Shown: positions 19,955 through 44,766 of the stretch, piece by piece
Numbering within the stretch: the stretch's first letter is position 1
Layout of the letters: every line of letters begins with the position of its first letter
NCBI GenBank assembly: GCA_002269645.1
Contig: NIVC01001524.1
Coordinates: forward strand, 186,001 to 250,000
DNA: 64,000 bases
Reading direction: 5' to 3'
Source: Macrostomum lignano
Lineage: Eukaryota
Notes under the pieces: model-generated
Databases searched by the model: none
What the model was told of the DNA's origin: nothing
What the model saw: only the letters and a program-made list of their open reading frames with translations
Position numbers and translations under genes: made by a program

Positions 19955-22900
19955 TCACAGGTTTTTCTCAATATAATCCAGCGCGTCGGCCACCTCTTTC
20001 GCTGGCGGCCTGTTCCGCGGCTGGGCGTCCCAACAGCGCTCCATCAGATCCCAAAGATCGGCGGGTATGCAGGGCAGTCGGTCCGGTCTGCTATTCATGC
20101 TACCTGCGAGTAGTATTGCTCCGACCGACGGCATCACTTCCACGTATTTCGGATGCTTACTGCCGCTGCCCTCACTGGAGTTAAATAATTGATAAATTTT
20201 TAGTTAACAGAAATAAATAATTATTTACTCTAAACCCAAAATAGTTAATAAATTTTAGGGTAGCATGCATCGTGCATCAATAAGTTATTTACTAAATTTT
20301 ACATATGTTAAAAATACGTAAGTTAAAAGTGGTGTATCCACGTAGTTAAAGCGTCAACATAAATTTGAATTATTTAGTAGATAAATAGAAGTATAATTTA
20401 AACTAATTCGAAACATAAAATCATTGACAAAAAGTCATTTTCAACTTTTTGTTATAGTCACTTTGCGAAGCGATCCCGATATTTTGAAATTCGTAGCTCG
20501 TAAAAGCGACTTTATTTTATCAATAATAAAAGATCTGATAGAATATGAATGCAATAATAAATAAATTGCAAGGATAAAACTATATTTGAACGATGTATAC
20601 ATATATGTAAAGCTAGAACCTTTTTAACTACCTATAGATTTGCATGTTTGACTTGATTACTTTACCAGAGATACCACAGAGCAATGCCAAGGCTGTAGAC
20701 ATCGGCACTGATATCATAGCTGCTGTTGGTGACCATCTCCGGTGCCAAATAGATCGGCGTGCCAACCAGCGACTGACCAGTGAGTCCCGTGCTCTTGAGC
20801 AGTCCGAAATCTGTTAGCCTTACCGTATTGAGCTCGGCGTCAACCTGCGCTGGGTAAAAGTTGGAATAAAACACTTCGGCTTCCTTTCTGATTGGTCTTT
20901 TCTTTTCTGAGACATGGTGGGTGTCAGTATCTGATTGGTTGGCAGGATTTATAGGGGTGGTGGGTGTCAGTGTCTGATTGGTTGGCAAGAATTTATAGGG
21001 GTGGTGGATGTCAGTATCTGATTGGTTGGCAGGATTTATAGGGGTGGTGGGTGTCAGTGTCTGATTGGTTGGCAAGAATTTATAGGGGTGGTGGGTGTCA
21101 GTGTCTGATTGGTTGGCAAGAATTTATAGGGGTGGTGGATGTCAGTATCTGATTGGTTGGCAGGATTTATAGGGGTGGTGGGTGTCAGTGTCTGATTGGT
21201 TGGCAAGAATTTATAGGGGTGGTGGGTGTCAGTGTCTGATTGTTTGGAAAGAAATGTGGTTATCATAGCTTAATGAGTTAAAAATTACTGACCAGCAAAT
21301 TTTGCAGCTTCACATCTCGATGGATGAGGCTGCTGGAGTGCAGGAATTCAAGCGCTCTGGCCAGCTGCAGGCCAAACCAGATCCGCTTGCGCAGGGTCAG
21401 CTGCCGGTTCTGCATCAGTTGCCAAACGTCGCTGTGCATGAGGTCCATGTACAGCTCGAATGTCCAGATGGCATCTTCTTCGGGATCGTCGGGCTCGCGC
21501 GTTTCCAACAGGCGAACGCCTTCAATAGACAGCAGGTTGCAATGGCGCAATACGCTGTTGGGATATGAGTTGCATAGGGCTGAGCTAGGGAACGCATGAG
21601 ACAGACAATGAGACAGACAATGAGACAGACACTGAGACAGACACTGAGACAGACGCTGAAACAGACACTGAGACGGATACAGAGACAGACACTGAGACGG
21701 ATACAGAGACAGACACTGAGACGGACACTGAGACAGACACTGAGACAGACACTCAGACGGACACTGAGACAGACACTCAGACAGACACTCAGACAGACGC
21801 TGAGACAGACACTGAGACAGACGCTGAGACAGACACTGAGACAGACACTGAGACAGACACTGAGACAGACACTGAGACAGACGCTGAGACAGACACTGAG
21901 ACAGACACTCAGACAGACACTCAGACGGACACTGAGACAGACACTCAGACAGACACTCAGACGGACACTGAGACAGACACTCAGACAGACACTCAGACAG
22001 ACACTGAGACAGACGCTGAGACAGACACTGAGACAGACAATGAGACAGACACTCAGACAGACACTCAGACGGACACTGAGACAGACACTCAGACAGACAC
22101 TGAGACAGACACTCAGACAGACACTCAGACGGACACTGAGACAGACACTCAGACAGACACTCAGACAGACACTGAGACAGACGCTGAGACAGACACTGAG
22201 ACAGACAATGAGACAGACACTGAGACAGACACTGAGACAGACACTCAGACAGACACTCAGACGGACACTGAGACAGACACTCAGACAGACACTCAGACGG
22301 ACACTGAGACAGACACTCAGACAGACACTCAGACAGACACTGAGACAGACGCAGAGACAGACACTGAGACAGACGCTGAGACAGACACTGAGACGGATAC
22401 AGAGACAGACACTGAGACGGATACAGAGACAGACACTGAGACGGACACTGAGACAGACACTGAGACAGACACTCAGACGGACACTGAGACAGACACTCAG
22501 ACAGACACTCAGACAGACGCTGAGACAGACACTGAGACAGACGCTGAGACAGACACTGAGACAGACACTGAGACAGACACTGAGACAGACACTGAGACAG
22601 ACGCTGAGACAGACACTGAGACAGACACTCAGACAGACACTCAGACGGACACTCAGACGGACACTCAGACAGACACTCAGACGGACACTGAGACAGACAC
22701 TCAGACAGACACTCAGACAGACACTGAGACAGACGCTGAGACAGACACTGAGACAGACAATGAGACAGACACTCAGACAGACACTCAGACGGACACTGAG
22801 ACAGACACTCAGACAGACACTGAGACAGACACTCAGACAGACACTCAGACGGACACTGAGACAGACACTCAGACAGACACTCAGACAGACACTGAGACAG

Positions 22901-25900
22901 ACGCTGAGACAGACACTGAGACAGACAATGAGACAGACACTGAGACAGACACTGAGACAGACACTCAGACAGACACTCAGACGGACACTGAGACAGACAC
23001 TCAGACAGACACTCAGACGGACACTGAGACAGACACTCAGACAGACACTCAGACAGACACTGAGACAGACGCAGAGACAGACACTGAGACAGACGCTGAG
23101 ACAGACACTGAGACGGATACAGAGACAGACACTGAGACGGATACAGAGACAGACACTGAGACGGACACTGAGACAGACACTGAGACAGACACTCAGACGG
23201 ACACTGAGACAGACACTCAGACAGACACTCAGACAGACGCTGAGACAGACACTGAGACAGACGCTGAGACAGACACTGAGACAGACACTGAGACAGACAC
23301 TGAGACAGACACTGAGACAGACGCTGAGACAGACACTAAGACAGACATTCATATCAATCAAACAGGCAGATCCAGACAAACCTTACTACACACAAAGCAA
23401 TTTACCTGCTATAGAAAACTTCCGACGAAATGTTGCCCAAACTTTGCGACTCCACATTGACCACCTTAGCGGCCATAGCAACCTCGCCCTGGGTGTCGCG
23501 TACCGCATAGACGGTGCCTTGAGCACCAGAGCCAAGCTGAGCTCGCTTATCGATGGTATATCCCCGGAACTGGTAGCCCGTGGCGACATCCAGACAGCGG
23601 GTGTACATGAAAGCGAGCCGAGGCGCCAGCTGGACAATTCTCTGCCGTTCCAACTCGCTTAAGCTGGCCGAGTTTTCTACCAGCTGTTCTGAACAGCGGA
23701 TCTTCTGCAAGAATCTGAAATGGCGCTTGTCCAACCATTTGTTCATGGAGTCTACCAGGCATTCGACCAGTCGGCCTGTGTTGATCTTTTCTACAATGAG
23801 TTTAGTTAGATCCGTAATTTATGTAGATATGAGTTTACTCAGCGAAATCACGGCGCTCATGGAAATCACAGAACTCACGGAGCTCAAGGAACTCACAGAA
23901 CTCATGGAACTCACAGAACTCATGGAATTCACAGAACTCATGGAATTCGCAGAACTCATGGAATTCACAGAACTCATGGAATTCACAGAACTCATGGAAT
24001 TCACAGAACTCATGGAATTCACAGAACTCATGGAATTCACAGAACTCATGAAATTCACAGAACTCATGGAATTCACAGAACTCAAGGAACTCACAGAACT
24101 CATGGAACTCACAGAACTCATGAAATTCACAGAACTCATGGAATTCACAGAACTCATGAAATTCACAGAACTCATGGAATTCACAGAACTCAAGGAACTC
24201 ACAGAACTCATGGAACTCACAGAACTCATGAAATTCACAGAACTCATGGAATTTACAGAACTCACGGAGCTCAAGGAACTCACAGAACTCATGGAGCTCA
24301 AGGAACTCACAGAACTCATGGAATTCACAGAACTCATGGAATTTACAGAACTCACGGAGCTCAAGGAACTCACAGAACTCATGGAGCTCAAGGAACTCAC
24401 AGAACTCATGGAATTCACAGAACTCATGGAATTCACAGAACTCATGGAATTCACAGAACTCATGGAATTCACAGAGCTCATGGAATTCACAGAACTCATG
24501 GAATTCACAGAACTCATGGAATTCACAGAACTCATGGAATTCACAGAACTCATGGAATTCACAGAACTCATGAAATTCAGAGAACTCATGGAATTTACAG
24601 AACTCACGGAGCTCAAGGAACTCGCAGAACTCATGGTACTCATTTGGAACCCATGAACCCCTGGAACACATAAACCCTGGAACACATGAACCCTGGAACA
24701 CATGAACCCTAGTTGGAACACATGAACCCTGGAACACATGAACCCTGGAACACATGAACCCTGGAACACATGAACCCTGGAACACATGAACCCTGGAACA
24801 CATGAACCCTGGAACACATGAACCCTGGTACACATGAACCCTGGAACACATGAACCCTGGTACACATGAACCCTGGAACACATGAACCCTGGAACACATG
24901 AACCCTAGTTGGAACACATGAACCCTGGAACACATGAACCCTGGAACACATGAACCCTGGTACACATGAACCCTGGAACACATGAACCCTGGAACACATG
25001 AACCCTGGAACACATGAACCCTGGTACACATGAACTCTGGTACACATGAACCCTGGAGCACATGAATCCTGGAACACATGAACCCTGGAACACATGAACC
25101 CTAGCTGGAACACATGAACCCTGGTACACATGAATCCTGGAACACATGAACCCTGGAACACATGAACCCTGGTACACATGAACCCTGGTACAAATTAACC
25201 CTGGAACACATGAACCCTGGAACACATGAACCCTGGAACACATGAACCCTGGAACACATGAACCCTGGAACACATGAACCCTGGAACACATGAACCCTGG
25301 TACACATGAACCCTGGTACACATGAACCCTGGTACACATGAACCCTGGTACACATGAACCCTGGTACACATGAACCCTGGAACACATGAACCCTGGAACA
25401 CATGAACCCTAGCTGGAACACATGAACCCTGGAACACATGAACCCTGGAACACATGAACCCTGAAACACATGAACCCTGGAACATATGAAACCCTTAAAA
25501 TCGTTACGTTCTGAGTTATACGCAATCAGTTAGTCCCAGGATAGTTAGTGCACAAGGACTCACTGATATGACACTTGGCCTGAAACCGCTTCCACTCAGG
25601 ATCCTGCACTGGCCGACTGAAAATCACTCCGGGATGACGGAGAATCGTTTGAATATTGAGCGACATCTGACGCATCACCGTCCTGAAGCCGAGGCTGTAA
25701 ATATCGCTAGCCTGCAGGTCGCACTCGTCGGCTAGAGTAGCTTTGAGCACGGCCAAACTTGGCGTCTGCTCGATGTCTCTCTCGTATTCGAATACTCGAG
25801 CTTTTAAATCTTCCAATTCGGCGAAGCAGTCCTGCATTGCGCCCTTTTGCAGGAACTCTTGATAGGCCACGATAACCCTGTTGTTGATGAATCGGTGGAT

Positions 25901-28900
25901 TTCGGTGACGCAGCGCTCTTCGATTTGATTGGAGGAGAGGTTTGCGTCGATGACGTTCTCTGAGTACTCCATCGACTTCACTTCCTCGAGCAGAATTGGT
26001 CCCTTCAATGTTTTTTTGCATGGATATACAGAAAAACGCATGTGTTGTTTCGTTTTCTGATTTTTTAGGAATCGTAGGTCTAAAATATTGTAGCCTAGTG
26101 GTTAGAGCGCGTCGGACTAACGACTGAACAATTTGTGTTTTTGAGCAAGGTACTTAACTCTTCATTGCTTCAGTTCACTCAGCTGTAAAATGGGTGCCAG
26201 CATTAGCTGGGATAATTGAGGGTGTGTGGCAACCCCCCCCCCAGTCCTTGGACTGAACAGCCGTACGCAGCCTTCAGATGCGCCGCGCAATATCTGCAGC
26301 TGAGCTGTCGGTTGTACATCTGCCATTATGACAGGTGTAATAAATTATTAATATTATTTGCGACTTGACATCAAGTGGGATACACATGAACAGGGTCTTC
26401 TTCGACAAAACTGTACTTTTAAATCTTGTAAAAACCTCACGTCGATGGGTTTTTACAATCAAGAAATCATCGTTAATACGAATATAAGTTGCAATTTAAG
26501 TACATTTAAGGCAGTCACGTGCAATCCCAAAATTTCAGTGACAACATGCGAGTAAAACGGGTAGCTTCTATAGTTTATTTATTTATTTATTTATTTAAAA
26601 ATCCAAATACGCCTAAAATGACTATCTCCCAACTTACTAACACTTAGTCATTCAGGGTACACAGGCACACATTCGCACTACACAGTTGACATGATGTTTT
26701 CATCTGTAAGACAGCAAACACTGATTTTGGGTATTCCAGCGCGAGAGTCCGTCGCGTTTACCTGAGCCGCTCTGTCCCAATTTTGTGCACCGACATAGAC
26801 CAAAGTCAACTCGCATTCTACAAGAATAGAAATGAACTCTTACGACTTGTTACTAAAACTATCAGTTATAATATCTATTAGTTATTACACCGGGTAGGCG
26901 TTTTCAATTCTTTCATGCAATAGTTCGTGCTTGACTTATCTAATATCTATGGCACAACTTTTTTCGTCTAGCACTTCGTTAGCACGGAGAGAACGTTTGA
27001 AACAGAATTTGAAAACGGATGAGAGATCAGGAAGCTGTTAGAGAACATCGTAAGTTTAGCATTTTTGGCTTTTAATACACAGCAATGAATTCAATTGCCA
27101 ACTATAATTTCGTCAAAAATCGAAAACTAAGTATCACGTATAGCAATCACAAGTATCACCAATAAATCAATGCCCTCCTCACCTGACTCTTAATTAAACT
27201 TTCCGCCTCACGTTCAAAGCCTTCGCGATGTTTTTCAACAATTTTCTTGGACTGCTCGTGGTTCCGACACTCCATAGCTCGGATCATTTCGAGATTTTTG
27301 CGCCGCATCTGCGTGCAAGCTCGAATATCGTTGGCCTTGTTCATCACCAAGTCCATAGTTTGGCAGTGCAAAACTCGCAAGCCTGAGCAAGCGCCAAGGA
27401 TTAGGCTGCGAAACTGTTCGGCAGCGAAGTCGGCCAGTTTTTGTTGCATCTCGTTGAAGCGAAGCACCCACTTGCTGCGTTTCACGGCGGCTCCGGCCGC
27501 TTGATCTCCGCCGGATCTTTTGATTGCTATCGCCACGCGCCTCCTGTAGTTCTTCATCTCCCAGCTCGAGATGCAGAAGAATCTCGAACAACTTTCGGGC
27601 GTTTCTTCCGCGCCGAAGCATTGAAGCTTTTTGAGTCGACTGAAAACACGTCGAGCACGATCCTGCTCGATGTCTTCGATTGTACGACCACTTTCTGGCG
27701 TTGGAATATCCTCTTTGGAAACGTCCATTTTTGTTACTAGATAGAATAGTTCAAGTTCCGGAGCTGTGGCTCGAATGTTTTCAATGTCTTTCTCGGCCTA
27801 GGGAAGGAATGAAACTGTGGTAGAGTTTTGATGGTATTATAGAGAGCTTACTTGTTTTCATTTAGTGATGCGTTGGATTGTGACTAATTCTGACTAATTT
27901 CTTAGGCACTGGTTTGCGAGGGCCTATCGCGTTTAGTGGGGGTGGCGGTGCGTGCTGAGGTGGTTGTTGCGTTTGGGGTGCTTTGTCCTTGTCCCCCCCG
28001 CTGAGGGTTGGATGGTCTTGGGGTTGGATGGTCTTGGGGTTGGATGGTCTTGGGGTTGGATGGTCTTGGGGTTGGATGGTCTTGGGGTTGGATGGTCTTG
28101 GGGTTGGATGGTCTTGGGGTTGGATGGTCTTGGGGTTGGATGGTCTTGGGGTCGGATGGTCTTGAGGTTGGATGGTCTTGGGGTTGGATGGTCTTGGGGT
28201 TGGATGGTCTTGGGGTTGGATGGTCTTGGGGTTGGATGGTCTTGGGGTTGGATGGTCTTGGGGTTGGATGGTCTTGAGGTTGGATGGTCTTGGGGTTGGA
28301 TGGTCTTGGAGTTGGATGGTCTTGGGGTTGGATGGTCTTGAGGTTGGATGGTCTTGGAGTTGGATGGTTCTGGGGATTGGATGGTCTTGAGGTTGGATGG
28401 TCTTGGGGTTGGATGGTCTTGGGGTTGGATGGTCTTGGGGTTGGATGGTCTTGGGGTTGGATGGTCTTGGGGTTGGATGGTCTTGGAGTTGGATGGTCTT
28501 GAGGTTGGATGGTCTTGGTGTTGGATGGTCTTGGGGTTGGATGGTCGCGGGGTTGGATGGTTTTAGAGCTACTGGTTTTTGTTCATATATTTTCCTATGG
28601 TCCATATGGTAAAATACAAACAATGGTTATTTTGATGCTCAAAGTAAATGATTCAGTTATTGTATGTAAAACAGTAGCTCGAAGAAAATTACCGCCAAAG
28701 TGATTCCGTATCGACCGTCGATAACGTACAAAATGATTGGCAGAAACGAGTCAATCGCCCGCATGGTCAGGGTGTCAAGAGCGTCGTTTTCGTTTAGTCC
28801 GGGCGAATCCACAATGTCCAGTCCGCACTTGCGCAGAAACTCGCTAGGCACACCGAGCTCAACTGATGCGCTCAATAAATTTGCATCTTCACGACTGTCG

Positions 28901-31900
28901 TCTTTTAGCCAGATGAAATTTTCGTCAATTTTGCCGTCCTCCGGTTGGACTGTCTGGCCCAATTGCTTGCCATGCTTGTCTAGGAGGCGAACTGTCACTC
29001 GGTCTGCGTAGGTTATTCGAGTCACTCTGGCTGTGCACGGCGTCGATGATTGGTCAACAAACTTGCGACCTTGAAAAAGTTATAATTTTATTGAACTATA
29101 CAGTTTAAATTGACTTTTTGTAGTCCTTACTTGTAGTGAATGTTATCTAGAAAGCTTACTGTGGGTTGGCTTTATTCATTCGGTCGCAAAACCGAAACCC
29201 CAGAAGTATCGTGGCGTCATAAATTTAAAACGCAGTGTCTTTCATAAGTTCTAGACTTCATTCTGATTATAGTTCGATCTAGTGATGCATCTGATGTTAT
29301 ATTTCAGTTTTTATATATTTGGTCTTGTCATTTTTGTGTCCTGTAATGCATCGGTGGTGCAATGTCTTTAACATGAGACCCCTGCCAGACAAAAATTACT
29401 TATGTAAACTTTTGGATGCAAGTTACTGTAACAAATTGCTATCGCTAGAAATTTTGTCGAAATGAGTCTGCTCCTAGCTTTGCTCTACCGGTATAATATA
29501 AATCACCTAATACAAAACGATTCTGGAAGACAGCCAATGGTACAGCCGCAGCACTCGGCGAGGCGAGGCATGACCCCTGCATCACTCATTTACCGTGGCT
29601 GCCTTGGGAATCGACGCAAGCAGCCTATTTAGCTGCGCGCTAACCGTGGCCAATTCTAATTAACTTGCATCACCTTGAAATACTTGTCCGACTGAACAGA
29701 TGCATACCACTTGGTAGTCTATATAACTATTATACTTGTTTCTCCATACCTACTGTAAAGCATAGTAACTTCTCGCTCCCCTCAGAATGCGCAGCAACTG
29801 CTTCACATCTCAGCCCATAGACAAAACCGCAGAAGGGCAACTCGTCTGCCGGTCCTTGTACTCTGGCCTTCTATCGAATCGAACAACTTTCTAGGCTACA
29901 CGGCTCGTTAAGAGCGCCCTTAATTCTAGCTCTAATAAGCTAAAACTAACGCTAAAAAGCATCGAAGATCTTGCGCAGGGTGCACAACGTGACGACGAGA
30001 ATTATTCTCATAGTCGGAGAGTGACAGTGAGAGACGTAACTAATTAGGCCATTTGCGTTTTCGCCAAATACTATAGGAGCAGTCATAATCTAAAAACCCA
30101 AAGAGAGGCCGACGGAAATAAGACGACAAAGTAATTCAGCATCAAGACGGCATGTCCAGCTTCAGCCTCGCCGAGGCTTTGAAAAAGTCTCGGCCGCACC
30201 GCGCCGGCCAGTTCGTCTCGCCGCCACGCGTTCTGACGTTGCACAACTCGCGCAGCGAGCCTTCGCACATGACAATTCGAAGGCGCAACGACGACATAAT
30301 TCGCCTGCCGGCGCAGCCCTGGCATTCACCCACAGCCCGGGGGATCTGCGGCAGCAGCTCGCCGCCGCCGACGCCGCCGCAGCCGTTGCCGGTGTCTTTT
30401 AGCGTTGATTTTCCGCAACGAGGCAATGTTAATCTGCACCAATATCTGCCGCGCAATTTTGGTCAACAGAAATTCGTTCTGAATAATAACAGCTTTGCTG
30501 GAGGCAGCGGCGCGATGCTCAACCACACGGACACCAGCGGCGAGGACGCCAAATCCAGCGGCACGCTGGCTGGCCTCTCCGACACGATTTCTATCGACGC
30601 CAGCATTTCCGATCATTTCCTGTGCGAGCGAAGCGACAGAGTCTGGCACAGCGGCGGCAACTGCAGTAATTCGACGCACCGCAATCGACGTCGTTCCAGA
30701 CGACGCGGTGGCTCGAAGCGTCGTCGGAAACCGACGGACTATGACGAACAAGTCGACCAAGATGACAGCGACGATTCGCCGCGCGTGCCGGAAGTTCTGA
30801 ACGCTTCGAACGATCGGAAGCATCAAAATTATCTGCGCATTAAAGCTCCAGCAAGGAAACACTATCAGCATCAGTCGCAGCAGAATCAGGTGATTCAGTG
30901 CCAGCAACAGAGCAGCAGCGGGCAATATCAGTACATCAGCAGCAGCGGTGGCAGTGAAGAATTTTGCGACATGCCCCAGCAATACATTCGCAGTACCAAT
31001 ATAGCGGGACTGTGTGAGTTAGCTGCGGCGAAACTTCTCTTATTTATGAATCTAAACAGAAGCGTGAAGAGTGGTGTTAGAAAGTGTCACATGAGATCTA
31101 GGGCACGTTTAGGCTGCGATTGAAACACGCAGTTAATCCAAAACACCCTCAAGGACGCTTTACTAAAAATGGACCTATAACGAATCTAAGATACATTTAT
31201 GACAAATCCAGCGAAACCCTTCAACCCATCGCAGTTGCAAACGCCAGCTGCCTCGCCGACCAGCGCAGTCCAAGCCAACGCAGCGACCACAGCGAGCCGC
31301 AATTCGGCCGAGAGGACCTTAAAGTGCGCGGTCACTGGCAGGAGTCCTTAAGCAACGATGATCAAAGCACAACTGAGGCGTCCTGCACCGACGAAGAGAA
31401 TAAAACTCAAATTGCTGGAGTTGACAGCGACTTGACGGCTCTGACGCTTAGCAGAATGGAGCTGAGCAGTTCTCAGGCTGCCGCTACGGAGCAGAAACTC
31501 CTGCAGCAGCTGCAACAGAAGCAGCACAGGTCGCGACGGTACGGCGGAGGAGGCGGAGGAAGTACCACGTCGCCAGGTTCCAACGAAATGAGTGAGGATG
31601 TCAGCAGTCGCAGCCATAACAAGCAGCTGCAGCAACAGCAGCAGCAACTGCCTCGGCACCAAATCCAGCAACTGCATCAGCAGCAGTCGCAGCTGCAACA
31701 GCAGCATCAGCAGTATCATTTTGACAAGCAGCAGCAGGTGTTGATTCAACAACCGCAGCAATTTCAACAGCAACAGATGCAGCAGATGCCACAGCAACAG
31801 CAGATTCAACCAAGGCATCAACATGTAGTTATGCCGCCAGTGCTGGAGCCGCATCAGCTGATAGCTGCCCAGCAGATGATGGTTGGAATGAACTATGATC

Positions 31901-34361
31901 AGCCGGCCCAGCAAAATCAGCAGCAGACGCAGCAGCCGACGGTGCAACAGCCGACGCCGCAGTTTGCTCAGCCACAGTATCTGGCGCAGCCATATCAACT
32001 GATTTGCCAGCCTTCGCCGTCGATGTATCCCGATCAATCAAACGGCCTGACCATCACCAACCCGATACCGTGGCAGCAGCAGCCTTCAAATATTCAGCAA
32101 CAGCACCAGCAACAGCAACAGCATTTTGTTCCACAAGCACTGTTGGCTCAATTGCCAGAGCAGCAGAAGCAAAGTCTGCCAAGTCCGAAGCATCATCAAC
32201 ATCATCGTCAGCGAGCTCAACATGACAGACATCCGCATTTGAGCAGCTCCGGACGTCATCCGCTCGGTCAGAACAGCTCCAGTTCGAGCTTCTCTTTGAG
32301 CCAATCGCAGCGCAGTACTCGCGAGTCTAACTCCGCACGGGATGAAGAAATCATACCGGCGTCGGATGATCTGGTTCACCTGTCCGTCATCAGCTGCACG
32401 GAGGCTGGCGATCGCAGCGGCGGCAGCGGTCGCGTTGGGGGCGGCGGCGGCGTCGGCGGTGGCAACTCGGAGGGCGAAGCGACAACGGCTCCGGCAGTGG
32501 AGACAGAAGCCGAGGGAGAAGTTGGCACGACTCTGTGCGCGGAGACGGATGATCATCGGGTGCCGTGCTCCGTGGTTTCGACCGAGCAACGACAGGAGCC
32601 ACAGCAACCACTTCAGCAGCACTTAGACAAGCCGCAGAATCACAACCAGCAACCGGTCCATGAGGAAAGTCATCACATCCACCGCAGCCGTGAGCAGCAA
32701 GCCAAGCAGGAGCAGATTTTGTCACCATCGGAGTCGCAGCAATCGTCTCGCTACGGCCGATTGAAGACGCCAGAAATTTGCAAGCGAGACTTTCTATCCA
32801 TGCTTCGGCAGAACATCTCGCACGGTAGGCTGCACCGACGTGCCAAAATGAAGCTGAACAGGCGGTCCTAGCTGACCAAGTTTCAAGATCCCAACACAAA
32901 TATTTGCCAGCAAAATCAATTCCTCGATTGTCAATTGTCGCGCCTCCATTGGGACTGCAGTCTTCTTATAAAAACTCAAACTTGTGCGCCAGCGTGAACT
33001 CTCCCTCCCACACACACCCAACCCCTTCAAAGTCTTCTCAGCAGAGTCGAATTTGTAATGCTGTCCGTATCCGTACCGCGCTCTCAACCAATTGAGTGTT
33101 TATTTGCGTAATTGTAACCAATTCAGCACCAGCTCGTGCGCAAAACGCGAAGTTAACAACGCCAATACGCTGCATGCACATTCGGTTGTGTTTAAAAAGT
33201 GCTTTTAACACACACGCACAATTTTTCGTAACTTATAAATGTGGTAAATCCATTCTTTTTGTTTCCTACTCCATCCCCGATTGGCAGCTTAAACTGCAGT
33301 AACCGTCGAGTTTACAATGCCGCCTTTTTTAAACTGTTTCGCTTCTGGCCCTCCCGTACTCATGGTCTCCTCGCAGACTGTTTGGTAACCTGCTCTCCGA
33401 ATTATTTCGCACGTCGTCTCAAAACTGTGACTGCGCATTTACCTCGAAACCTACTAAACCGACTGCAATGTTTTTTCATTCATTTTTTTAATATATAAGA
33501 CAAATTTCAGGTGTCCAGAGAATATTTTTTCTTGTAACCTCAAGACACAAAGCGTATGGTTATGTAAAATGCTCGGTATATTCTGTTGCTTTTGTGTTTC
33601 CGTGCTGACGAAGGCAAGGGCAGGGGGATGTTAGACAAGTGAACAAGGATGTTAGAATAACAACACGGATGTTAGACTATAACAGCGAGGGTGTTAGAAA
33701 AATTAAAGAAAGAAAATCAGACCAGAACAATGATGTTGCAAAAATTAAAAAGGATGTCAGACCAGAACAAGGATGTTGGACAAATTAAAAAGGATCTCAG
33801 ACCAGAACAAGGATGTTGGACAAATGAAAGATGATGCCAGACCAGAACAAGGATGTTGGACAAATGAAAGATGATGCCAGACCAGAACAAGGATGTTAGA
33901 CAAATGAAAGACGATGTCAGGCCAGAACAAGGATTTATGACAAATGAACAAGGTTGTTAAAAGACGAGACTACATGTATGTTAGACCAATAAGCAGGGAA
34001 AGCTTAGCCGCGAGAAATGTTACACAAAGAACTCACCTAACAGTTCGTTAATAAAGGTGCTCTTTCCTGAGTTGCTCTGACCAACAACTACTATGCAAGG
34101 CCGTTCGGGACTGTTCGCAGCAGACGAACTATTGAAGCCACCGCCGCTTTTGAACAGCTGGTTAACCCGTTCTCGGACACCCTGCAAAGCCAAATTCTCT
34201 CGAATCTCGGCCACTAATTCCGGTGACAAAACTTTTACAAAGTCTTTGTCTAGCAGAGACTCAGTTTGGTCTAATAGTTTGTTTAATCTGTCACGATCGG
34301 CGTAGAATCGAGAGATCTCGAAGCTCAATGGTGACTCGTTCGAATCTTTAGACATGCTCAT
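19955..34361 (-). CDS. DSTYK: DSTYK/RIPK5-like protein: dynamin-type GTPase + helical region + C-terminal protein kinase (933 aa)
   Basis: Exons 34037-34361, 28693-29069, 27183-27797, 25564-26002, 23406-23790, 21293-21554, 20666-20844, 19955-20174 join in frame (2802 nt). Kinase motifs GSGAQG, AAK, HRDVKLQN, DFG, GTPIYLAPE, LMERCWD..P..RP. N-terminal GQSNSGKS, PCTAR, DSPG, TKMD. SFLPIILYV, the WKR..A helix and HRDxKLxN recall DSTYK (about 930 aa). Orthology not tested by phylogeny. Confidence 0.85.
20915..21245. repeat. Intronic minisatellite, alternating 43/44-bp units (87-bp dimer)
   Basis: GGTGGGTGTCAGTATCTGATTGGTTGGCAGGATTTATAGGGGT and its variant. Confidence 0.95.
21596..23345. repeat. 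Intronic minisatellite, 12-bp unit with 720-bp higher-order repeat
   Basis: ACTGAGACAGAC; diagnostic CGGATAC variant at 21674, 22394 and 23114. Confidence 0.95.
23850..24635. repeat. Intronic minisatellite, 18-bp unit
   Basis: CATGGAATTCACAGAACT (spurious MEFTEL ORF). Confidence 0.95.
24650..25492. repeat. Intronic minisatellite, 16-bp unit
   Basis: CATGAACCCTGGAACA. Confidence 0.95.
26090..26340 (+). mobile_element. tRNA-headed CORE-type SINE fragment in DSTYK intron 3
   Basis: A-box-like GTAGCCTAGTGGTTAGAGCG followed by TTGAGCAAGGTACTTAACTCTTCATTGCTTCAGTTCACTCAGCTGTAAAATGGG, resembling the CORE/MIR central domain. B box missing; 3' end approximate. Confidence 0.55.
28004..28562. repeat. 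Intronic minisatellite, 16-bp G-rich unit
   Basis: TGGGGTTGGATGGTCT. Confidence 0.95.
30152..32871 (+). CDS. Gln/Ser-rich low-complexity orphan protein nested antisense in DSTYK intron 1 (about 832 aa, 2 exons)
   Basis: ORFs 30152-31123 and 31120-32871 join in frame through a candidate intron 31014-31234 (T|gtgagt...catcgcag|TT). GC-rich codon-like composition, non-periodic poly-Q. No recognisable domain. A possible further donor (CACG|gtaggc) near 32825 means the 3' end is uncertain. Confidence 0.6.
33625..33960. repeat. Degenerate 40-bp tandem repeat
   Basis: ACCAGAACAAGGATGTTGGACAAATGAAAGATGATGCCAG at 33761, 33801, 33841 and 33881. Confidence 0.88.
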
Positions 34362-38088: not shown

Positions 38089-41000
38089 TCAGAGCAGTCG
38101 CAAATTTGTTACCAGCATCGAATTAAAATCGGTTAGACGTTGATAATCTCCCGGCTCGCTAGCTTGTCCGAAATATTCGCTAAATGATTTTGCATCTCCG
38201 GCAGCTGCAGGTTCACATTCCGGTCTAGGCTCGCTCAGCCGATGAGAAGGTCGGTGCTGCTGTTTCTGCTGTTGCACAGTCGGGGGCGGCTGCAGCAGCA
38301 GCGGACAAGGAAGCAGTTCAGGTATAACTGACAGGTGACAGATTAGTGAGTGCAAATTCGGCCACTCTTTGGATAGGCCTTTGAGCTTGACGCCTCTGGC
38401 TGTGCACTGGATCAGGTAGTGAGACAGTGCCTGCTGCTTCTGATGAGGCACGCATACCTGGTGGTTGAAATGTTGCAGGGTGTTCCAGGTGAATTTCTTT
38501 CAAAGCAGTGGTTTGTTTGCATTTGCATTTCTTTGGGTACAATATGAGCACAGGGGCGATTTTCTATTGAGTGACAAGGGCGATTTTCTGGGAGTGACTG
38601 GGGCGATTTTCTGGGAGTGACAGGGGCGATTTTCTGGGAGTGACAGGGGATTTTCTGTGAGTGACAGGGGCGATTTTCTGGGAGTGACAGGGGCGATTTT
38701 CTGGGAGTGACAGGGGCGATTTTCTGGGAGTGACAGGGGCGATTTTCTGTTTGTGTGACAGGGGCGATTTTCTGGGAGTGACAGGGGCGATTTTCTGTTT
38801 GTGTGACAGGGGCGATTTTCTGTTTGTGACAGGGGCGATTTTCTGTTTGTGTGACAGGGGCGATTTTCTGTTTGTGTGACAGGGGCGATTTTCTGTTTGT
38901 GTGACAGGGGCGATTTTCTGTTTGTGTGACAGGGGCGATTTTCTGTTTGTGTGACAGGGAGGATTTTCTGTTGAGTGACAGGGGCGATTTTCTGTTTGTG
39001 TGACAGGGGCGATTTTCTGTGAGTGATAGGGGCGATTTTCTGCTGAGTGACAGGGGCGATTTTCTGTTTGTGTGACAAGGGCGATTTTCTGTGAGTGACA
39101 GGGGCGATTTTCTGTTGAGTGACAGGGGCGATTTTCTGTTTGTGTGACAGGGGCGATTTTCTGTGAGTGACAGGGGCGATTTTCTGTGAGTGACAGGGGC
39201 GATTTTTTGGGAGTGACAGGAGCGATTTTCTGGGAGTGACAGGGGCGATTTTCTGTCTGTGTGACAGGGAGGATTTTTTGTTTGTGGGACAGGGAGGATT
39301 TTCTGTTGAGTGACAGGGGCGATTTTCCGGGAGGACAGGGGCGATTTTCTGGGAGTGACAGGGGCGATTTTCTGGGAGTGACTGGGGCGATTTTCTAGGA
39401 GTGACTGGGGCGATTTTCTGTCTGTGTGACAGGGAGGATTTTTTGTTTGTGTGACAGGGAGGATTTTCTGTTGAGTGACAGGGGCGATTTTCCGGGAGGA
39501 CAGGGGAGATTTTCTGTGAGTGACAGGGGCGATTTTCTGGGAGTGACAGGGGCGATTTTCTGTGAGTGACAGGGGCGATTTTCTGGGAGTGACAGGGGCG
39601 ATTTTCTGGGAGTGACTGGGGCGATTTTCTGTTTGTGTGACAGGAAGGATTTTCTGTTGAGTGACAGGGAGGATTTTCTGTTTGTGTGACAGGGGCGATT
39701 TTCCGGGAGTGACAGGGGCGATTTTCTGTGAGTGACAGGGCGATTTTCTAGGAATGGCAGGGGCGATTTTCTGCGAGTGAAATGCAAAATTCCCTAGTGA
39801 TAGAGGGAGCGATTTTCAGTGCGCGATGAGGAATGAATCTCGTAGGGAGTAAAGTCAATCTAATAGAGTTGATCGAAGAGTGAATATCAAAGGTAAATTA
39901 AAACTAGCAAAGTACAAATAACTTGTAATACGAACCGAAAGTGCGTAGCAGTTCGGGTGACTGGCACTGTTGCGCACTAAGAAGCTTCCCACTGGCCTGC
40001 CAGCCAACAGCTTATAAGCCGCCTCCCTTGGCAACTCGGGTTGATACCACCACCAGCTCTGGCCGCTGCCGCTGTCTGACTCCATCTCATCGCTTAGGCT
40101 CTGAGGCTCGGCTTGTCGCTGATCTACCGTTTCAGCCTTCGGGATGGCATCTGGAGGCAGTGGCGGCGGCGGTGGCACCTCGAACTCGCAAGGTCGGCAC
40201 TGAAGACTGTCGTAGCTGCATTGGTGAGACATCAGGGGGTGGGAGTTATGGTTCAGGTGCAGTTGACAGGCTGGGCCAGCAACTGATGGTCTGGGAGTCT
40301 GGCCCAGCAACTGAGGATCTGGGAGGCTGGGTCCAGCAACTGAGGATCTGGGAGGCTGGGCCCAGCAGCTGAGGATTTGGGAGGCTGGCCCAGCAACTGA
40401 GGATCTGGGAGGCTGGCCCAGAAACTGATGGTCTGGGAGTCTTGCTCAGCAGCTGAGGATTTGGGAGGCTGGCCCAGCAACTGAGGATCTGGGAGTCTGG
40501 CCCAGCAAATGAGGATGAAGGAGGTTGGTGGCCCAGCAACTTGGGATCCGGGAGGCTGGCCCAGAAACTGATGGTCTGGGAGTCTGGCCTAGAAACTGAG
40601 GATCCGGGAGAGTGGCCCAGTAACTGAGGATCTGGGAGTCTGGCTCAACAACTGAGGATCTGGGAGGGTGGCCCAGTAACTGAGGATATGGGAGTCTGGC
40701 TCAGCAACTGAGGATCTGGGAGGTTGGTGGCCCAGCAACTTGGGATCCGGGAGGCTGGCCCAGAAACTGAGGATCCGGGAGAGTGGCCCAGTAACTGAGG
40801 ATCTGGGAGTCTGGCTCAACAACTGAGGAAGTGAGAGTCTGGCTCAGCAGCTGAGGATCTGGGACGCTGGCTCAGCAACTGAGGATCTGGGAGGCTGGTG
40901 GCCCAGCAACTGGATGATCTGAGAGGCTGGTGGCCCAGCAACTGGATGATCTGAGAGGCTGGTGGACCAGCAACTGAGGATCTGAGAGGCTGGTGGCCCA

Positions 41001-42805
41001 GCAACTGATGATCTGAGAGGCTGGTGGCCCAGCAACTGGATGATCTGAGAGGCTGGTGGACCAGCAACTGAGGATCTGAGAGGCTGGTGGCCCAGCAACT
41101 GATGATCTGGGAGGCTGGTGGACCAGCAACTGAGGATCTGGGAGGCTGGTGGCCCAGCAACTGGATGATCTGGGAGTCTGGCTCAGCCTATAAAGCAAAG
41201 AAAAATCAACAGACAGCAGTTGCTACCGAGTTGGCAGTGGCGGAGGCTGCTGCTGCTGAGCGCTGTGCACCGATCTGCCAGCTACAGGACTGGCAACATA
41301 GCTGTTGCTGCTGACCTGCCCGCCGCCGATAGACCTTGGCGCGGGAATCGGCTTGGGCTTGACAACGTACTGCGAAGGCTGCTCAATGCTCTGCTGCTGT
41401 TGCTGCTTTTGCAAATGCTTCTGCTTTTGGCGATGCGGCTTTCTTGCAGCTGAAAAATGAATGATGAAGTCCAGCAGAAGTCCGACAACCTGACAACCAT
41501 AATTTCTTATTCTTCAGACACCAATCAGAAAATCAATAGGACATTATGTACTTTTATCCTGGCACAGGGCCGTAGCTCAGCGGCCCAGGCTCGATTCCAA
41601 GTGCTGTCAGATTAATTTGTAGCTCAACTGGAATCTCGGCTTGGCTCTGCTCGTGCTTTAAAAAGCCACTGAAAGCCAACCCCCCCCCCCAAGGCACAGT
41701 GAAGTATACATGACTAACGATAAATAAAGCTAAGGCCGCTGTACACTCCTGTGTGTGTGTGCCTGTGGGTATGACTGCGTACGCATCCGCGTGATTGTGT
41801 GCCTGCTCAGGGAAGTCGGCGGAATAGGCAGCAATGCCTCTCGCCGGTTGTGACAATATCGCTTAAAGTGCGCCAGGGTGCACACAGGTCCTTTACATCT
41901 AATAAACATGTACTTTCATTTATTTAGACACTTGCACTTTTATTGATGATACCCAATAAAAGCACCTTAATAAGACACAGTGTACTGGAAACGTATGCAC
42001 TTTAACTGACACAATGTTTCAGAACCATGTACTCTTAGTTAAAAACCGATCAGACTCTCTAATACTCATATACTTTAAGTCACCAAGCATCCCAGGCACT
42101 AGATAGAACACTGTGTACTTTATTCAGGCACCAATCTAATACACTTAATCGAACACTATGCACTTTTATTCGAGAAACAAAGGAAATACACCTAATATGA
42201 GAAGCATGTACAGTTATTAAGACGAAAATCGGATATCCGACCAAACACAATATGTACTTTAACTTATACAAAAATCTAGGACACAATGTACTTTTTAAGC
42301 ATAACCCAACGCTTTTGAGTTTACCTTCAGCCGCAGACTCAGACTTAAACTTCTCTTTTTCAGCCACCAGCAGAGCGTGTTCAAAGCAGGCCCCAATTAG
42401 ACTACTCAGTTCACGAGCAGCTCGAGGCGACTCAGTGGCGAACACTCGACACAGGGCAGGCGTGGACCGGCCACCCCCGGCCGCCTCTCTGGCCGAGAAG
42501 GCAAACAAAGACCGATCCGGATCGCAGCTGGCCATCGAGATTCGTCTCAGTGGGTGCGTGGATAGCAACTGATCCGCACTGGTACTCTGATTTGATGTCG
42601 AATAAATATCGATTCCTAAATATGATATTCTTAACTGAACTGGTTGTCCATCAGAAGCGGCTGGTAGGCTGGTAGGCAGCTGAACTGAACTGCCTGTAGT
42701 AACAGGAAATGTTGCCACGTGTCTAACATAGCGAACAGAATCTGCAGTGCGAAGCTGTTGCTGTACACAGCTGTCAGGTATCAAACAGTCTCGATTGCGG
42801 CGCAT
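38089..42805 (-). CDS. PTB + SH2 domain adaptor protein, SH2D5/EGFRAP-like (450 aa)
   Basis: Exons 42325-42805 (PTB-like: HVATFPV, LRISYLGIDIY, HPLRRISMASCDP, CRVF), 41227-41449, 39936-40215 (SH2: WYQPELPREAAYKLL...GSFLVRNS...YALS), 38089-38457 (SHYLIQ...KLKGLSKEWPNLHSLICHLSVIPELLPCPL). Phases 1/2/0 are consistent. Confidence 0.82.
38548..39778. repeat. Intronic minisatellite, 23-26-bp unit
   Basis: GTGACAGGGGCGATTTTCTG plus a variable spacer. Confidence 0.95.
40265..41185. repeat. Intronic minisatellite, 28-32-bp unit
   Basis: GGCCCAGCAACTGAGGATCTGGGAGGCT and variants. Confidence 0.93.
41567..41875 (+). mobile_element. Possible tRNA-derived SINE in intron 1 of the SH2 adaptor gene
   Basis: GGGCCGTAGCTCAGCGG (A-box-like) next to GGCTCGATTCC (B-box-like) with the anticodon arm missing; 3' end approximate. 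Confidence 0.4.
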
Positions 42806-44766
42806 TGTTTTTTAATAGTTTCAGGAATATTTTAGTTGAAAGTTGCATTTTTATTGTCTGCAGATAACTAGGGACATAAGTGCAATGCTATCAAGTCATT
42901 AACTAGTGTTGTGTAGTGTCTAACAACAGAAAATTAGAAATTAGAAAGTTTACTATATTTCTATTATCATTAGAGCAAGATGCAATTAAAAGCAAGGTCT
43001 TGTCAAGCATTAGGGTTACAGAAATCATAGTTTATTACTAGGCATATGGTTGTATTGGCTAGTAGCTGATAAAAAAAAAAAAAAACAGAATAACATTGGA
43101 TGTTAATGTTAATGTCTGATATTAATTTAGGCAATCTAAATATCCCATTCTATATGTCTATTCATTCTATAGTTCTTCACAAGAAGCCTATAATTACCCA
43201 ACAATTTTCATATCTATAAAAAATTAAATATTGAAAACAGTAAACTAAGAACCTCTTAGAACACCTTTTACTTTATGTCTACTATACCAGAAATGGAAGA
43301 CCATCTTGTACATAAATGTGCAATACCCAGCCAAGCTGTTCAATCTGGCTGGCTAGCAATAGGCCTAGACAAGGCAAGTCACAAAACTGCCTACTCCAAA
43401 ATTATAGACATGCTACTAACTAGATGAAAGGACATTTAGCCCAAATAATATAGTCATTGATACCATTGCAATTTACTTAAATTAGATTAATTTTTGCTTA
43501 GGGTTTAATACATAAGTTGAAGTGGTTAAAGAATTTGTAAAATCTAGAGTCAAAAAGAGATTTAAAGGCCATTTATTTCAAAAAGACAATAAAGTTTATT
43601 ATCATAAGGTGATTTATAAAACTAAAGAAGTAAAGTACAAACTTTTAGTCATTTGCCTTTCTGTTTATGTTGCAAATTGCAAAGATTTTTTCATGTTCTG
43701 CTGTAAGGGGGTCCATATGCCATAGCTGTAGCTGTAAGCAAAACTATGGCTTATTCCAATCCTCCATATTCCATAGCCATAGGGACACCAATATTACTAT
43801 ATAGTAATAGCCATAGCCATAGTTTTAACAAAAAGTCTAGGAAACTAAATATTTTGAATCAAGAATATAACCTAGTGCTTAAACAACTGCCAAGGTATCT
43901 GCACTCTGGAAAAAAACTAGAAAACCCTGGAATATGCCCAAAAAACCTATAGAATTAAGACTGAACACCACCATGTTTTAATTTATTAATATTTTTGTTT
44001 CTTTTCAATCTTTCAATCTTTTCAGTTTATAGTACTATCAATATTTAAAATGAAAAGCTGGCTAGAACTAAATTTATTTTGTTTTGGCTTAGTTATATAA
44101 TATTATTTTTAGCTACAACTAGGGCAGTAGACAAACTATACTAACTAGGTATACTGCAGGTAGTTTACTTTTTAGGGAAGTTAGTATTTTTCTATTGCAA
44201 ATGCAATCTTTACAAAATGCATCATAACTTTTTTATAGTTAGCTAAATAGCTAATAAGTTAAAAACAAGTATATAGAACAAATTTTTATAAATAAATTAT
44301 TACTGTGTACTATTATGCCTAGTGGCTCACATTTATTGGATGTCTAGCTCAATGCCAAGCTGCATCCTACTTATGCTCAATTTCTCTAGAAGGTGAAAGG
44401 AAACACATTTGCTACATATTGTGGCTTGTCCAAGGTTCTCCCCCTTTTTATGTTTACATTTAACTTCATTTTCTCTCACTTTATTTATCCATTTATTCAG
44501 TTCCTGCAACCCATTTAATTTAGCCTCAATGTACTGCAGTCTTGCCATTTTATCTGTCACAAGTCATTTACATAATACTTATTGACCTACTTATTATATT
44601 AATCAATAAATGACATTAACTACAACTTTCATTTATTTGATTAACTAGCCCATAGCCTATCTTAAGTCATTTGCCAGTGGGGCAAAAACAACTTACAGTT
44701 CTCATCTCAAAGAAAGCTCTAAGATGTATTATTCTATAATACATAAATTATGGTGGTGACAGTGCT

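What the first reader, a model, noticed from the sequence alone, without database searches (positions are those of the whole stretch)
19955..34361. DSTYK-like kinase fused to an apparently catalytically intact dynamin-type GTPase
Seen: after splicing, all GTPase motifs are canonical: G1 GQSNSGKS, G2 Thr in PCTAR, G3 DSPG, G4 TKMD (dynamin-type TKxD), and a CISS G5-like segment. A long helical stalk and a kinase with intact GxGxxG/K/E/HRD/DFG/APE follow. Established: in vertebrate DSTYK the equivalent N-terminal region lacks a canonical P-loop and is rarely treated as a GTPase. Inference: this is an ancestral-type GTPase-stalk-kinase, conceptually parallel to Roco/LRRK proteins but built on a dynamin/mitofusin-like fold, possibly coupling GTP-driven oligomerisation or membrane remodelling to phosphorylation.
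Basis: partly seen in the sequence, partly recalled or inferred. Interest (0 to 1): 0.75.

Follow-up and report, generated by a model that had tools for sequence, protein, structure and literature searches.

The report
Flatworm DSTYK kinase with intact dynamin-like GTPase
This flatworm gene encodes one protein that joins an apparently working bacterial-dynamin-like GTPase and helical stalk to a DSTYK-type protein kinase, and it shows that the "non-catalytic" N-terminal part of the human disease kinase DSTYK is a decayed version of that same GTPase.

Summary
Window 34361-19955 (minus strand) holds one 8-exon gene of Macrostomum lignano. All introns are GT-AG, and the product is 933 aa.

- **Domains.** Pfam finds Dynamin_N (63 bits, cutoff 27) and Pkinase (128 bits). 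The G1-G4 motifs and all kinase catalytic motifs are canonical.
- **Link to BDLP.** The N-terminal 650 residues are collinear with the bacterial dynamin-like protein BDLP (hhalign E 1.7e-22 over 521 columns). BDLP is also the top Foldseek hit for the AlphaFold model.
- **Link to DSTYK.** The kinase and the N-terminal region are both homologous to vertebrate DSTYK. In vertebrate DSTYK the GTPase motifs are degenerate (GQDCNVKC, VAPC, no TKxD), and Pfam detects only the kinase.
- **One transcript.** A 99%-identical GenBank locus carries a single RNA-seq-derived CDS that spans both domains.

The architecture is not unique to this gene. Cnidarian, nemertean, brachiopod, hemichordate and amphioxus "DSTYK-like" proteins share it. 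Other relatives have lost either the GTPase motifs (vertebrates, a sea cucumber) or the kinase motifs (many paralogues).

Databases already auto-annotate the two domains, but I found no paper that describes DSTYK as a dynamin-like GTPase-kinase. GTP-driven assembly that controls or positions the kinase is an inference and was not shown here.

The parts
19955..34361 (-). Whole gene: 8 exons, 933-aa BDLP-like GTPase - stalk - DSTYK-type kinase (Macrostomum lignano)
   Evidence: Gene model. It is 99% identical to GenBank BOX15_Mlig016260g1, 944 aa. That locus carries a single transcript-derived gene call.
34037..34361 (-). Exon 1: start codon, N-terminal helices, and the P-loop G1 GQSNSGKST (34082-34056; Lys100)
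28693..29069 (-). Exon 2: switch I with G2 Thr121 in PCTAR (29040-29026), and G3 DSPG (28809-28798)
   Evidence: Pfam Dynamin_N covers residues 90-228.
27183..27797 (-). Exon 3: G4 TKMD (27734-27723), the G5-like FCISS (27578-27564), and the start of the helical stalk
25564..26002 (-). Exon 4: stalk (trunk) helices and a low-confidence loop at the position of the BDLP paddle
   Evidence: The acceptor at 26002 was chosen because it matches the GenBank protein P0001. Structure and alignment.
23406..23790 (-). Exon 5: last stalk helices and the kinase N-lobe (GSGAQG 23533-23516; Lys694 in AMAAKV 23479-23462; alpha-C Glu in SSEVFY 23428-23411)
21293..21554 (-). Exon 6: kinase catalytic loop HRDVKLQN (21322-21299)
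20666..20844 (-). Exon 7: DFG (20811-20803) and the activation segment with APE (within LAPEM, 20748-20734)
19955..20174 (-). Exon 8: kinase C-lobe end and the stop codon
30152..32871 (+). Nested opposite-strand gene (Q-rich ORFs) inside intron 1. It is not part of the protein but lies within the locus.
   Evidence: The ORFs are listed and have no Pfam match. The homologous GenBank locus has an 832-aa gene call on the opposite strand in the same intron.

Best explanation
This is a DSTYK-family gene of the flatworm Macrostomum lignano in which both enzymatic halves look intact.

The protein has three parts:
- an N-terminal dynamin-superfamily GTPase of the BDLP/mitofusin class;
- helical neck and trunk bundles, built as in BDLP from helices on both sides of the G domain;
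- a C-terminal DSTYK-type (TKL-like) protein kinase, attached directly to the last stalk helix.

Shown here: the gene structure, the domain identities, the intact motifs, the homology to both BDLP and vertebrate DSTYK, and the degeneration of the GTPase motifs in vertebrate and sea-cucumber DSTYK.

Inferred mechanism: like other BDLP-type proteins, the G domain binds and hydrolyses GTP on G-domain dimerisation, and this drives a change in stalk conformation or self-assembly on a membrane. By analogy with vertebrate DSTYK, the likely membranes are endolysosomal or autophagosomal. Because the kinase sits at the end of the stalk helix that returns toward the G domain, the nucleotide cycle would gate, cluster or position the kinase. 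This is a GTPase-controlled kinase, analogous to ROCO/LRRK but not homologous to it.
For: - **Gene model.** GT-AG introns and a continuous ORF.
- **One transcript.** The 99%-identical GenBank locus has a single CDS carrying Dynamin_N and Pkinase. That annotation was built from RNA-seq transcripts cut at trans-splice and poly(A) sites (PMC5730564).
- **Domain hits.** Pfam Dynamin_N 63.4 bits and Pkinase 128.2 bits. BDLP 2j68 E 1.9e-13, followed by Fzo1.
- **Full-length match to BDLP.** hhalign against a BDLP alignment gives 99.5% probability, E 1.7e-22, over 521 collinear columns covering the G domain and the helical domains.
- **Structure.** The AF2 model has pLDDT 82 and pTM 0.78. The top Foldseek PDB hit is BDLP 2j69_A, E 1.9e-16 over 718 columns; IniA ranks 4th.
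- **Conservation.** All M. lignano paralogues, and relatives in Nemertea, Brachiopoda, Hemichordata, Cephalochordata and Cnidaria at only 19-28% overall identity, keep G1-G4. In 51 full-length hits of at least 800 aa, which also include bacterial BDLP-like proteins, G1 is kept in 48 and all four motifs in 31.
- **DSTYK homology.**
- **Membrane context in vertebrates.** DSTYK is reported at late endosomes/lysosomes and at autophagosomes (PMC6981171; PMC9524203; PMC11933320).
Against: - No biochemical data exist for GTP binding, GTP hydrolysis, membrane binding or kinase activity.
- There is no transmembrane helix; the highest 19-residue Kyte-Doolittle mean is 1.38, inside the G-domain core.
- The segment that aligns to the hydrophobic BDLP paddle is shorter, less hydrophobic and modelled at low confidence. 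Membrane binding is therefore uncertain.
- The bacterial helical-domain HMM PF21808 does not hit this protein.
- Vertebrate DSTYK functions with a degenerate GTPase, so a nucleotide cycle is not essential to every family member.
- Expression of this exact copy is not shown. M. lignano carries many near-identical duplicates, and the window differs from the annotated GenBank locus (about 95% nucleotide identity in the upstream flank compared).
Confidence: 0.8

Rival explanations
1. The G domain keeps its motifs but works only as a constitutive nucleotide-bound scaffold or dimerisation module. It would have no hydrolysis-driven cycle and no membrane remodelling, and the protein would act simply as a localised kinase, as vertebrate DSTYK apparently does.
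For: Vertebrate and sea-cucumber DSTYK retain the fold but have lost G1-G4 and are still functional kinases (PMC11933320). This protein has no transmembrane segment or clear paddle.
Against: Switch I Thr, DxxG and TKxD are strictly retained across phyla at 19-28% overall identity. They are also retained in paralogues whose kinase motifs have decayed. This pattern argues for selection on GTP hydrolysis itself, not only on the fold.
Confidence: 0.15
2. The gene model is an artefact: a BDLP-like GTPase gene and a separate kinase gene lie next to each other and were joined by prediction.
For: The introns are long (up to 5 kb), full of minisatellites, and one holds a nested gene. M. lignano makes polycistronic, trans-spliced precursor RNAs.
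Against: - All seven junctions are GT-AG and keep the reading frame, with no stop codon.
- The GenBank CDS at the 99%-identical locus comes from transcripts cut at trans-splice sites and still spans both domains.
- The same architecture occurs in proteins from at least six phyla and in vertebrate DSTYK.
- AF2 gives pTM 0.78 for the single chain.
Confidence: 0.02
3. This copy is a silent or decaying duplicate in a recently polyploid genome and has no function of its own.
For: M. lignano has extensive recent duplication. At least two other divergent paralogue groups at 40-47% identity and a near-identical copy exist. One paralogue (P0010) has lost its kinase motifs.
Against: The 933-codon ORF is intact, the splice sites are canonical, and every catalytic motif is present. 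The few differences from the annotated copy are substitutions that leave the motifs untouched.
Confidence: 0.05

Closest known systems
[quoted passage not shown]
   Same: - Similar length (929 vs 933 aa) and the same order of parts.
- Homologous kinase: 133 bits, about 37% identity, with the HRDxKLxN catalytic loop.
- Homologous N-terminal G-domain-like region and helical region.
- The secondary-structure elements of the two AF2 models are collinear.
   Different: - Vertebrate proteins have a degenerate P-loop (GQDCNVKC), no switch I Thr, VAPC in place of DSPG, and no TKxD.
- Pfam sees no Dynamin_N in them.
- Their direct profile match to BDLP is only 53 columns, E 8e-7.
- The flatworm protein has all the motifs.
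Bacterial dynamin-like protein BDLP (Nostoc punctiforme, PDB 2J68/2J69) and IniA
   Same: - Same G-domain class, with PCTA in switch I and DSPGLN in switch II.
- Helices on both sides of the G domain form the neck and trunk.
- Full-length collinear homology.
   Different: - BDLP has no kinase.
- BDLP has a hydrophobic membrane paddle, which is not clearly present here.
- The flatworm stalk is too divergent to hit the bacterial helical-domain model PF21808.
Mitofusin / Fzo1
   Same: Same BDLP-like branch of the dynamin superfamily. Fzo1 is the second-best PDB sequence match.
   Different: This protein has no transmembrane anchor and no detectable similarity to Fzo1 outside the G domain. Mitofusins have no kinase.
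ROCO proteins / LRRK1-2 (Roc GTPase - COR - kinase)
   Same: The functional logic is the same: a GTPase and a kinase on one polypeptide, with dimerisation-dependent GTPase control expected.
   Different: They are not homologous. The Roc model scores 15 bits (cutoff 27) and there is no COR domain. Here the GTPase is a large dynamin-type domain with its own stalk.
Bacterial kinase-BDLP fusions (e.g. P0122, from a public sequencing-run assembly (Logan))
   Same: A protein kinase and a BDLP-type GTPase lie on one chain.
   Different: The order is reversed (kinase at the N-terminus), the helical domain is a typical bacterial PF21808 domain, and the kinase is of the bacterial type. This looks like an independent fusion.

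Membership tests
DSTYK family | C-terminal kinase domain closer to DSTYK than to other kinase families | tested here: met
   133 bits against vertebrate DSTYK, compared with at most 96 bits against the best PDB kinases (JAK, EGFR, PAK1).
DSTYK family | About 650-aa N-terminal region homologous to the DSTYK 'non-catalytic' region | tested here: met
   phmmer of residues 1-655 against vertebrate DSTYK gives two collinear segments, residues 88-269 (E about 1e-10) and 335-621 (E about 1e-17), with Z=1.
DSTYK family | One-to-one orthology with vertebrate DSTYK | tested here: inconclusive
   The NJ kinase tree supports the clade of sea cucumber plus vertebrates (194/200) and the Macrostomum clade (194/200), but the backbone is unresolved. 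M. lignano has several divergent paralogues.
DSTYK family | Dual Ser/Thr and Tyr kinase activity | not testable with these tools
   Only the motifs can be read: GxGxxG, K694, E709, HRD, DFG and APE are all present.
Dynamin superfamily, BDLP/mitofusin class | Dynamin_N G domain above the Pfam gathering score | tested here: met
   PF00350 scores 63.4 bits against a cutoff of 27.
Dynamin superfamily, BDLP/mitofusin class | Canonical G1 GxxxxGK[ST], G2 Thr, G3 DxxG and G4 [NT]KxD | tested here: met
   GQSNSGKST, PCTAR, DSPG and TKMD.
Dynamin superfamily, BDLP/mitofusin class | Helical neck and trunk collinear with BDLP | tested here: met
   hhalign gives 521 columns, E 1.7e-22. The top Foldseek hit is 2j69_A over 718 columns, TM-score 0.48 normalised to the target, rmsd 12.5. 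However, PF21808 gave no hit.
Dynamin superfamily, BDLP/mitofusin class | Membrane-binding element (paddle or transmembrane segments) | tested here: inconclusive
   There is no transmembrane-grade hydrophobic stretch. The paddle-equivalent loop is short and of low confidence.
Dynamin superfamily, BDLP/mitofusin class | GTP hydrolysis stimulated by G-domain dimerisation; self-assembly | not testable with these tools
   This needs biochemistry.
Classical dynamins | Middle domain, GED and PH domain | tested here: not met
   No Dynamin_M, GED or PH hit at E up to 1.
ROCO / LRRK | Roc GTPase domain followed by a COR domain | tested here: not met
   Roc PF08477 scores 15.1 bits against a cutoff of 27, over the P-loop only. 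There is no COR hit.

The most novel reading that the evidence does not exclude
DSTYK proteins form an unrecognised animal branch of the BDLP/mitofusin-type dynamin superfamily whose ancestor was an active GTPase fused to an active kinase.

The family then evolved reciprocal pseudoenzyme states:
- GTPase dead, kinase live: vertebrates and a sea cucumber.
- GTPase live, kinase dead: many cnidarian, nemertean, brachiopod and hemichordate paralogues.
- Both live: Macrostomum, and one paralogue in each of several phyla.

If this is right, human DSTYK (linked to urinary-tract malformations and spastic paraplegia SPG23) is a pseudo-dynamin-kinase. Its 'scaffold' region would be a membrane-associated BDLP-like stalk. 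The flatworm enzyme would offer a tractable system for seeing how a dynamin-type nucleotide cycle controls a kinase.
Probability: 0.5. Interest if true: 0.75.

Novelty: new variant of a known kind. Interest (0 to 1): 0.6.

Why it matters
DSTYK is a human disease gene, linked to congenital kidney and urinary-tract anomalies and to spastic paraplegia SPG23. It has also been implicated in lysosome biogenesis, autophagy and STING signalling. Even so, two-thirds of the protein is described only as a non-catalytic or scaffold region.

The flatworm gene is a clear intermediate. It links that region by strong sequence and fold evidence to bacterial dynamin-like proteins, whereas the vertebrate sequence alone shows only a 53-column trace. 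This gives a concrete structural hypothesis for how DSTYK is placed on endolysosomal and autophagosomal membranes.

It also identifies a second kind of GTPase-kinase single-chain enzyme, independent of ROCO/LRRK, and a family in which one or the other enzymatic half has repeatedly been inactivated.

The caveat is that public databases already auto-annotate Dynamin_N plus Pkinase on these invertebrate proteins. What is new is the interpretation, not the sequence. My literature check also covered only open-access papers and bioRxiv.

Tried and rejected
- **Alternative exon-4 acceptor.** An acceptor at 26056 would add 18 aa. I rejected it because the GenBank protein uses 26002.
- **Spliced window protein in the representative search.** I used the 99%-identical P0001 N-terminus with two paralogues instead.
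- **Word-index search with a 19-sequence family alignment.** It returned mostly bacterial kinases and no vertebrate DSTYK, so that search was wasted. I then retrieved vertebrate DSTYKs with a query recalled from memory. Only the database sequences that came back were analysed.
- **NJ tree of the G domain.** It was dominated by long-branch effects. The first bootstrap script timed out. The kinase tree leaves the backbone unresolved, so I make no claim about orthology or polarity beyond the taxonomic distribution.
- **Foldseek on the full-length vertebrate DSTYK model.** All of the top 50 hits were kinases, so it says nothing about the N-terminus. I used a profile-profile comparison instead.
- **Peng et al. 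2006 (PMC4277547).** This original Dusty paper is not held in the library.
- **Literature searches.** DSTYK combined with dynamin, 'GTPase domain', pseudoGTPase, or GTPase plus N-terminal found no paper that describes the domain.
- **Other readings.** ROCO, classical dynamin and mitofusin were each considered and rejected on domain tests.

Full report
**What is in the sequence**

The window is eukaryotic DNA with many minisatellites. On the minus strand between 34361 and 19955, eight open segments join through GT-AG introns with compatible phases into a 2802-nt CDS of 933 aa. The exons are 34361-34037, 29069-28693, 27797-27183, 26002-25564, 23790-23406, 21554-21293, 20844-20666 and 20174-19955. 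A tblastn of the product against the window finds only this one copy.

The product is 99% identical to GenBank BOX15_Mlig016260g1 of the flatworm Macrostomum lignano. That protein uses the same exon-4 acceptor I chose.

**Check of the observation**

All quoted motifs are present at the stated places:
- GTPase: GQSNSGKST (94-102), PCTAR (119-123), DSPG (196-199), TKMD (256-259), FCISS (308-312).
- Kinase: GSGAQG, K694, E709, HRDVKLQN, DFG, APE.

Pfam gives Dynamin_N 63.4 bits (cutoff 27) and Pkinase 128.2 bits (cutoff 31.7). No Dynamin_M, GED, PH, COR or PF21808 is found, and Roc scores below its threshold.

**One gene or two**

The homologous GenBank locus is NIVC01000284.1. It is about 95% identical in nucleotides in the upstream flank I compared. 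It carries a single 944-aa gene call with Dynamin_N and Pkinase. An 832-aa opposite-strand gene is nested in its first intron, an SH2 gene lies upstream, and a calcium-channel alpha2delta gene lies downstream.

That annotation derives from genome-guided RNA-seq transcripts cut at experimentally defined trans-splice and poly(A) sites (PMC5730564). The same two-domain architecture also recurs across phyla, as described below. A mis-joined model is therefore very unlikely.

**What the N-terminal part is**

- The best solved-structure match by sequence is Nostoc BDLP (2j68, E 1.9e-13), followed by Fzo1.
- A profile of the flatworm N-termini aligns to a cyanobacterial BDLP alignment with 99.5% probability, E 1.7e-22. 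The alignment runs over 521 collinear columns, from the helices before the G domain to the end of the trunk.
- An AlphaFold2 model has mean pLDDT 82 and pTM 0.78. Its best Foldseek match in the PDB is BDLP 2j69_A, E 1.9e-16 over 718 columns, ahead of all kinases. IniA ranks fourth.
- There is no transmembrane segment. The loop that aligns to the BDLP paddle is short and of low confidence.

So this is a BDLP-class dynamin-like GTPase with neck and trunk. It is neither a classical dynamin nor a mitofusin.

**Relation to DSTYK**

A profile search of 1.84 billion representative proteins found 2460 hits. [quoted passage not shown] They come from Tubulanus and Lineus (Nemertea), Lingula (Brachiopoda), Saccoglossus, Ptychodera and Glandiceps (Hemichordata), Branchiostoma, Nematostella and Apostichopus.

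I retrieved vertebrate DSTYKs separately, and Pfam finds only the kinase in them. Even so, the flatworm N-terminus aligns to them in two collinear blocks, the G domain (E about 1e-10) and the stalk (E about 1e-17). The flatworm kinase is closer to DSTYK (133 bits) than to any kinase in the PDB (96 bits or less).

In the alignment, vertebrates read GQDCNVKCQ / NCKLRR / DIVVAPCQ / FKVPKLG where the flatworm reads GQSNSGKST / PCTARV / DIVDSPGLN / LVTKMDV. The psG clade (vertebrates plus the sea cucumber, all with degenerate GTPase motifs) matches BDLP directly over only 53 columns, E 8e-7. The flatworm-type proteins are therefore the link that makes the homology obvious.

Papers on DSTYK call the region 'non-catalytic region 1' or 'scaffold domain'. 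Searches that combined DSTYK with dynamin, GTPase domain or pseudoGTPase found nothing that describes it.

**Family pattern**

The motif table shows three states.

| State | GTPase motifs | Kinase motifs | Where seen |
|---|---|---|---|
| 1 | intact | intact | All but one of the M. lignano paralogues examined; Tubulanus P0028; Saccoglossus P0408 and P0030; Lingula P0035; Branchiostoma P0038; Nematostella P0410 |
| 2 | degenerate | intact | Vertebrates; Apostichopus P0104, whose kinase motifs are identical to the vertebrate ones (clade support 194/200) |
| 3 | intact | degenerate | Nematostella P0040 (no kinase Pfam hit); many hemichordate, nemertean and brachiopod paralogues; M. lignano P0010 |

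The G motifs are retained at 19-28% overall identity, which argues for selection on nucleotide binding and hydrolysis. The intact state occurs in Cnidaria, Spiralia and Deuterostomia, which is consistent with it being ancestral. My NJ trees do not resolve the backbone.

**Mechanism**

Shown: an intact BDLP-like GTPase and an intact DSTYK-type kinase on one chain.

Inferred from established knowledge of dynamin-superfamily proteins: GTP-dependent G-domain dimerisation and stalk rearrangement or assembly. This probably happens at endolysosomal or autophagosomal membranes, where vertebrate DSTYK is reported. It would gate or cluster the kinase, which is attached to the last stalk helix.

This resembles ROCO/LRRK in logic only. 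The Roc and COR tests fail.

**Verdict**

Three refinements apply: the GTPase is BDLP-class, the architecture is family-wide rather than unique to this gene, and motif loss predates vertebrates.

The sequence and its Pfam domains are already in public databases. The interpretive point, that DSTYK is a dynamin-like GTPase-kinase that is active in many invertebrates and a pseudo-GTPase in vertebrates, appears not to be in the literature I could search.

Noticed in passing
window 30152-32871 (+), inside intron 1: Two adjoining long ORFs (323 and 583 aa; Q-rich, GC 0.54) lie on the strand opposite to the DSTYK-like gene and have no Pfam match. The homologous GenBank locus has an 832-aa opposite-strand gene call in the same intron (L001:11652-14371). 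This looks like a nested gene of unknown function.
   Followed up: partly
window 21597-23347, 23871-24610, 24645-25495, 28005-28561: Large intronic minisatellites: a 12-bp unit in 146 copies, an 18-bp unit in 41 copies, and two 16-bp units in 52 and 35 copies. They create long spurious ORFs on both strands.
   Followed up: no
window 53421-54743 (+): An ORF with a reverse transcriptase domain (RVT_1, 108 bits), probably a retroelement. An adjacent 371-aa ORF at 54662-55777 has no Pfam match.
   Followed up: no
window 42080-42805 (-) and about 38550-43478; L001:1884-6663: The upstream neighbour encodes a PTB/PID domain in the window, and it is called as an SH2-domain gene at the homologous locus. 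This looks like a Shc-like adaptor. Exons of a calcium-channel alpha2delta-like gene lie downstream at 502-1104 (-).
   Followed up: partly
P0122 (related protein, not in the window): A protein from a public sequencing-run assembly (Logan) carries an N-terminal Pkinase domain, Dynamin_N, and the bacterial dynamin-like helical domain (PF21808, 392 bits). This appears to be an independent bacterial-type kinase-BDLP fusion with the domains in reverse order.
   Followed up: partly
related proteins P0040, P0036, P0041, P0046, P0048, P0051-P0069, P0010: Many DSTYK-like paralogues in Cnidaria, Nemertea, Brachiopoda and Hemichordata, and one in M. lignano, keep the GTPase motifs but have lost HRD/DFG. 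They are GTPase-live, kinase-dead, the mirror image of vertebrate DSTYK.
   Followed up: partly
P0181, P0182, P0184 (Branchiostoma): A second, more distant set of amphioxus proteins also carries Dynamin_N plus a kinase. One is annotated 'MAP kinase kinase kinase' and is 1336 aa long. Their kinase domains fall outside the DSTYK clade in the NJ tree.
   Followed up: no
window 9836-10867 (+): A 343-aa ORF gives a sub-threshold match to the eIF2B-epsilon left-handed beta-helix domain (49.8 bits, cutoff 54). It lies in a region of strong GC skew, so it could be a real exon or a product of repeats.
   Followed up: no
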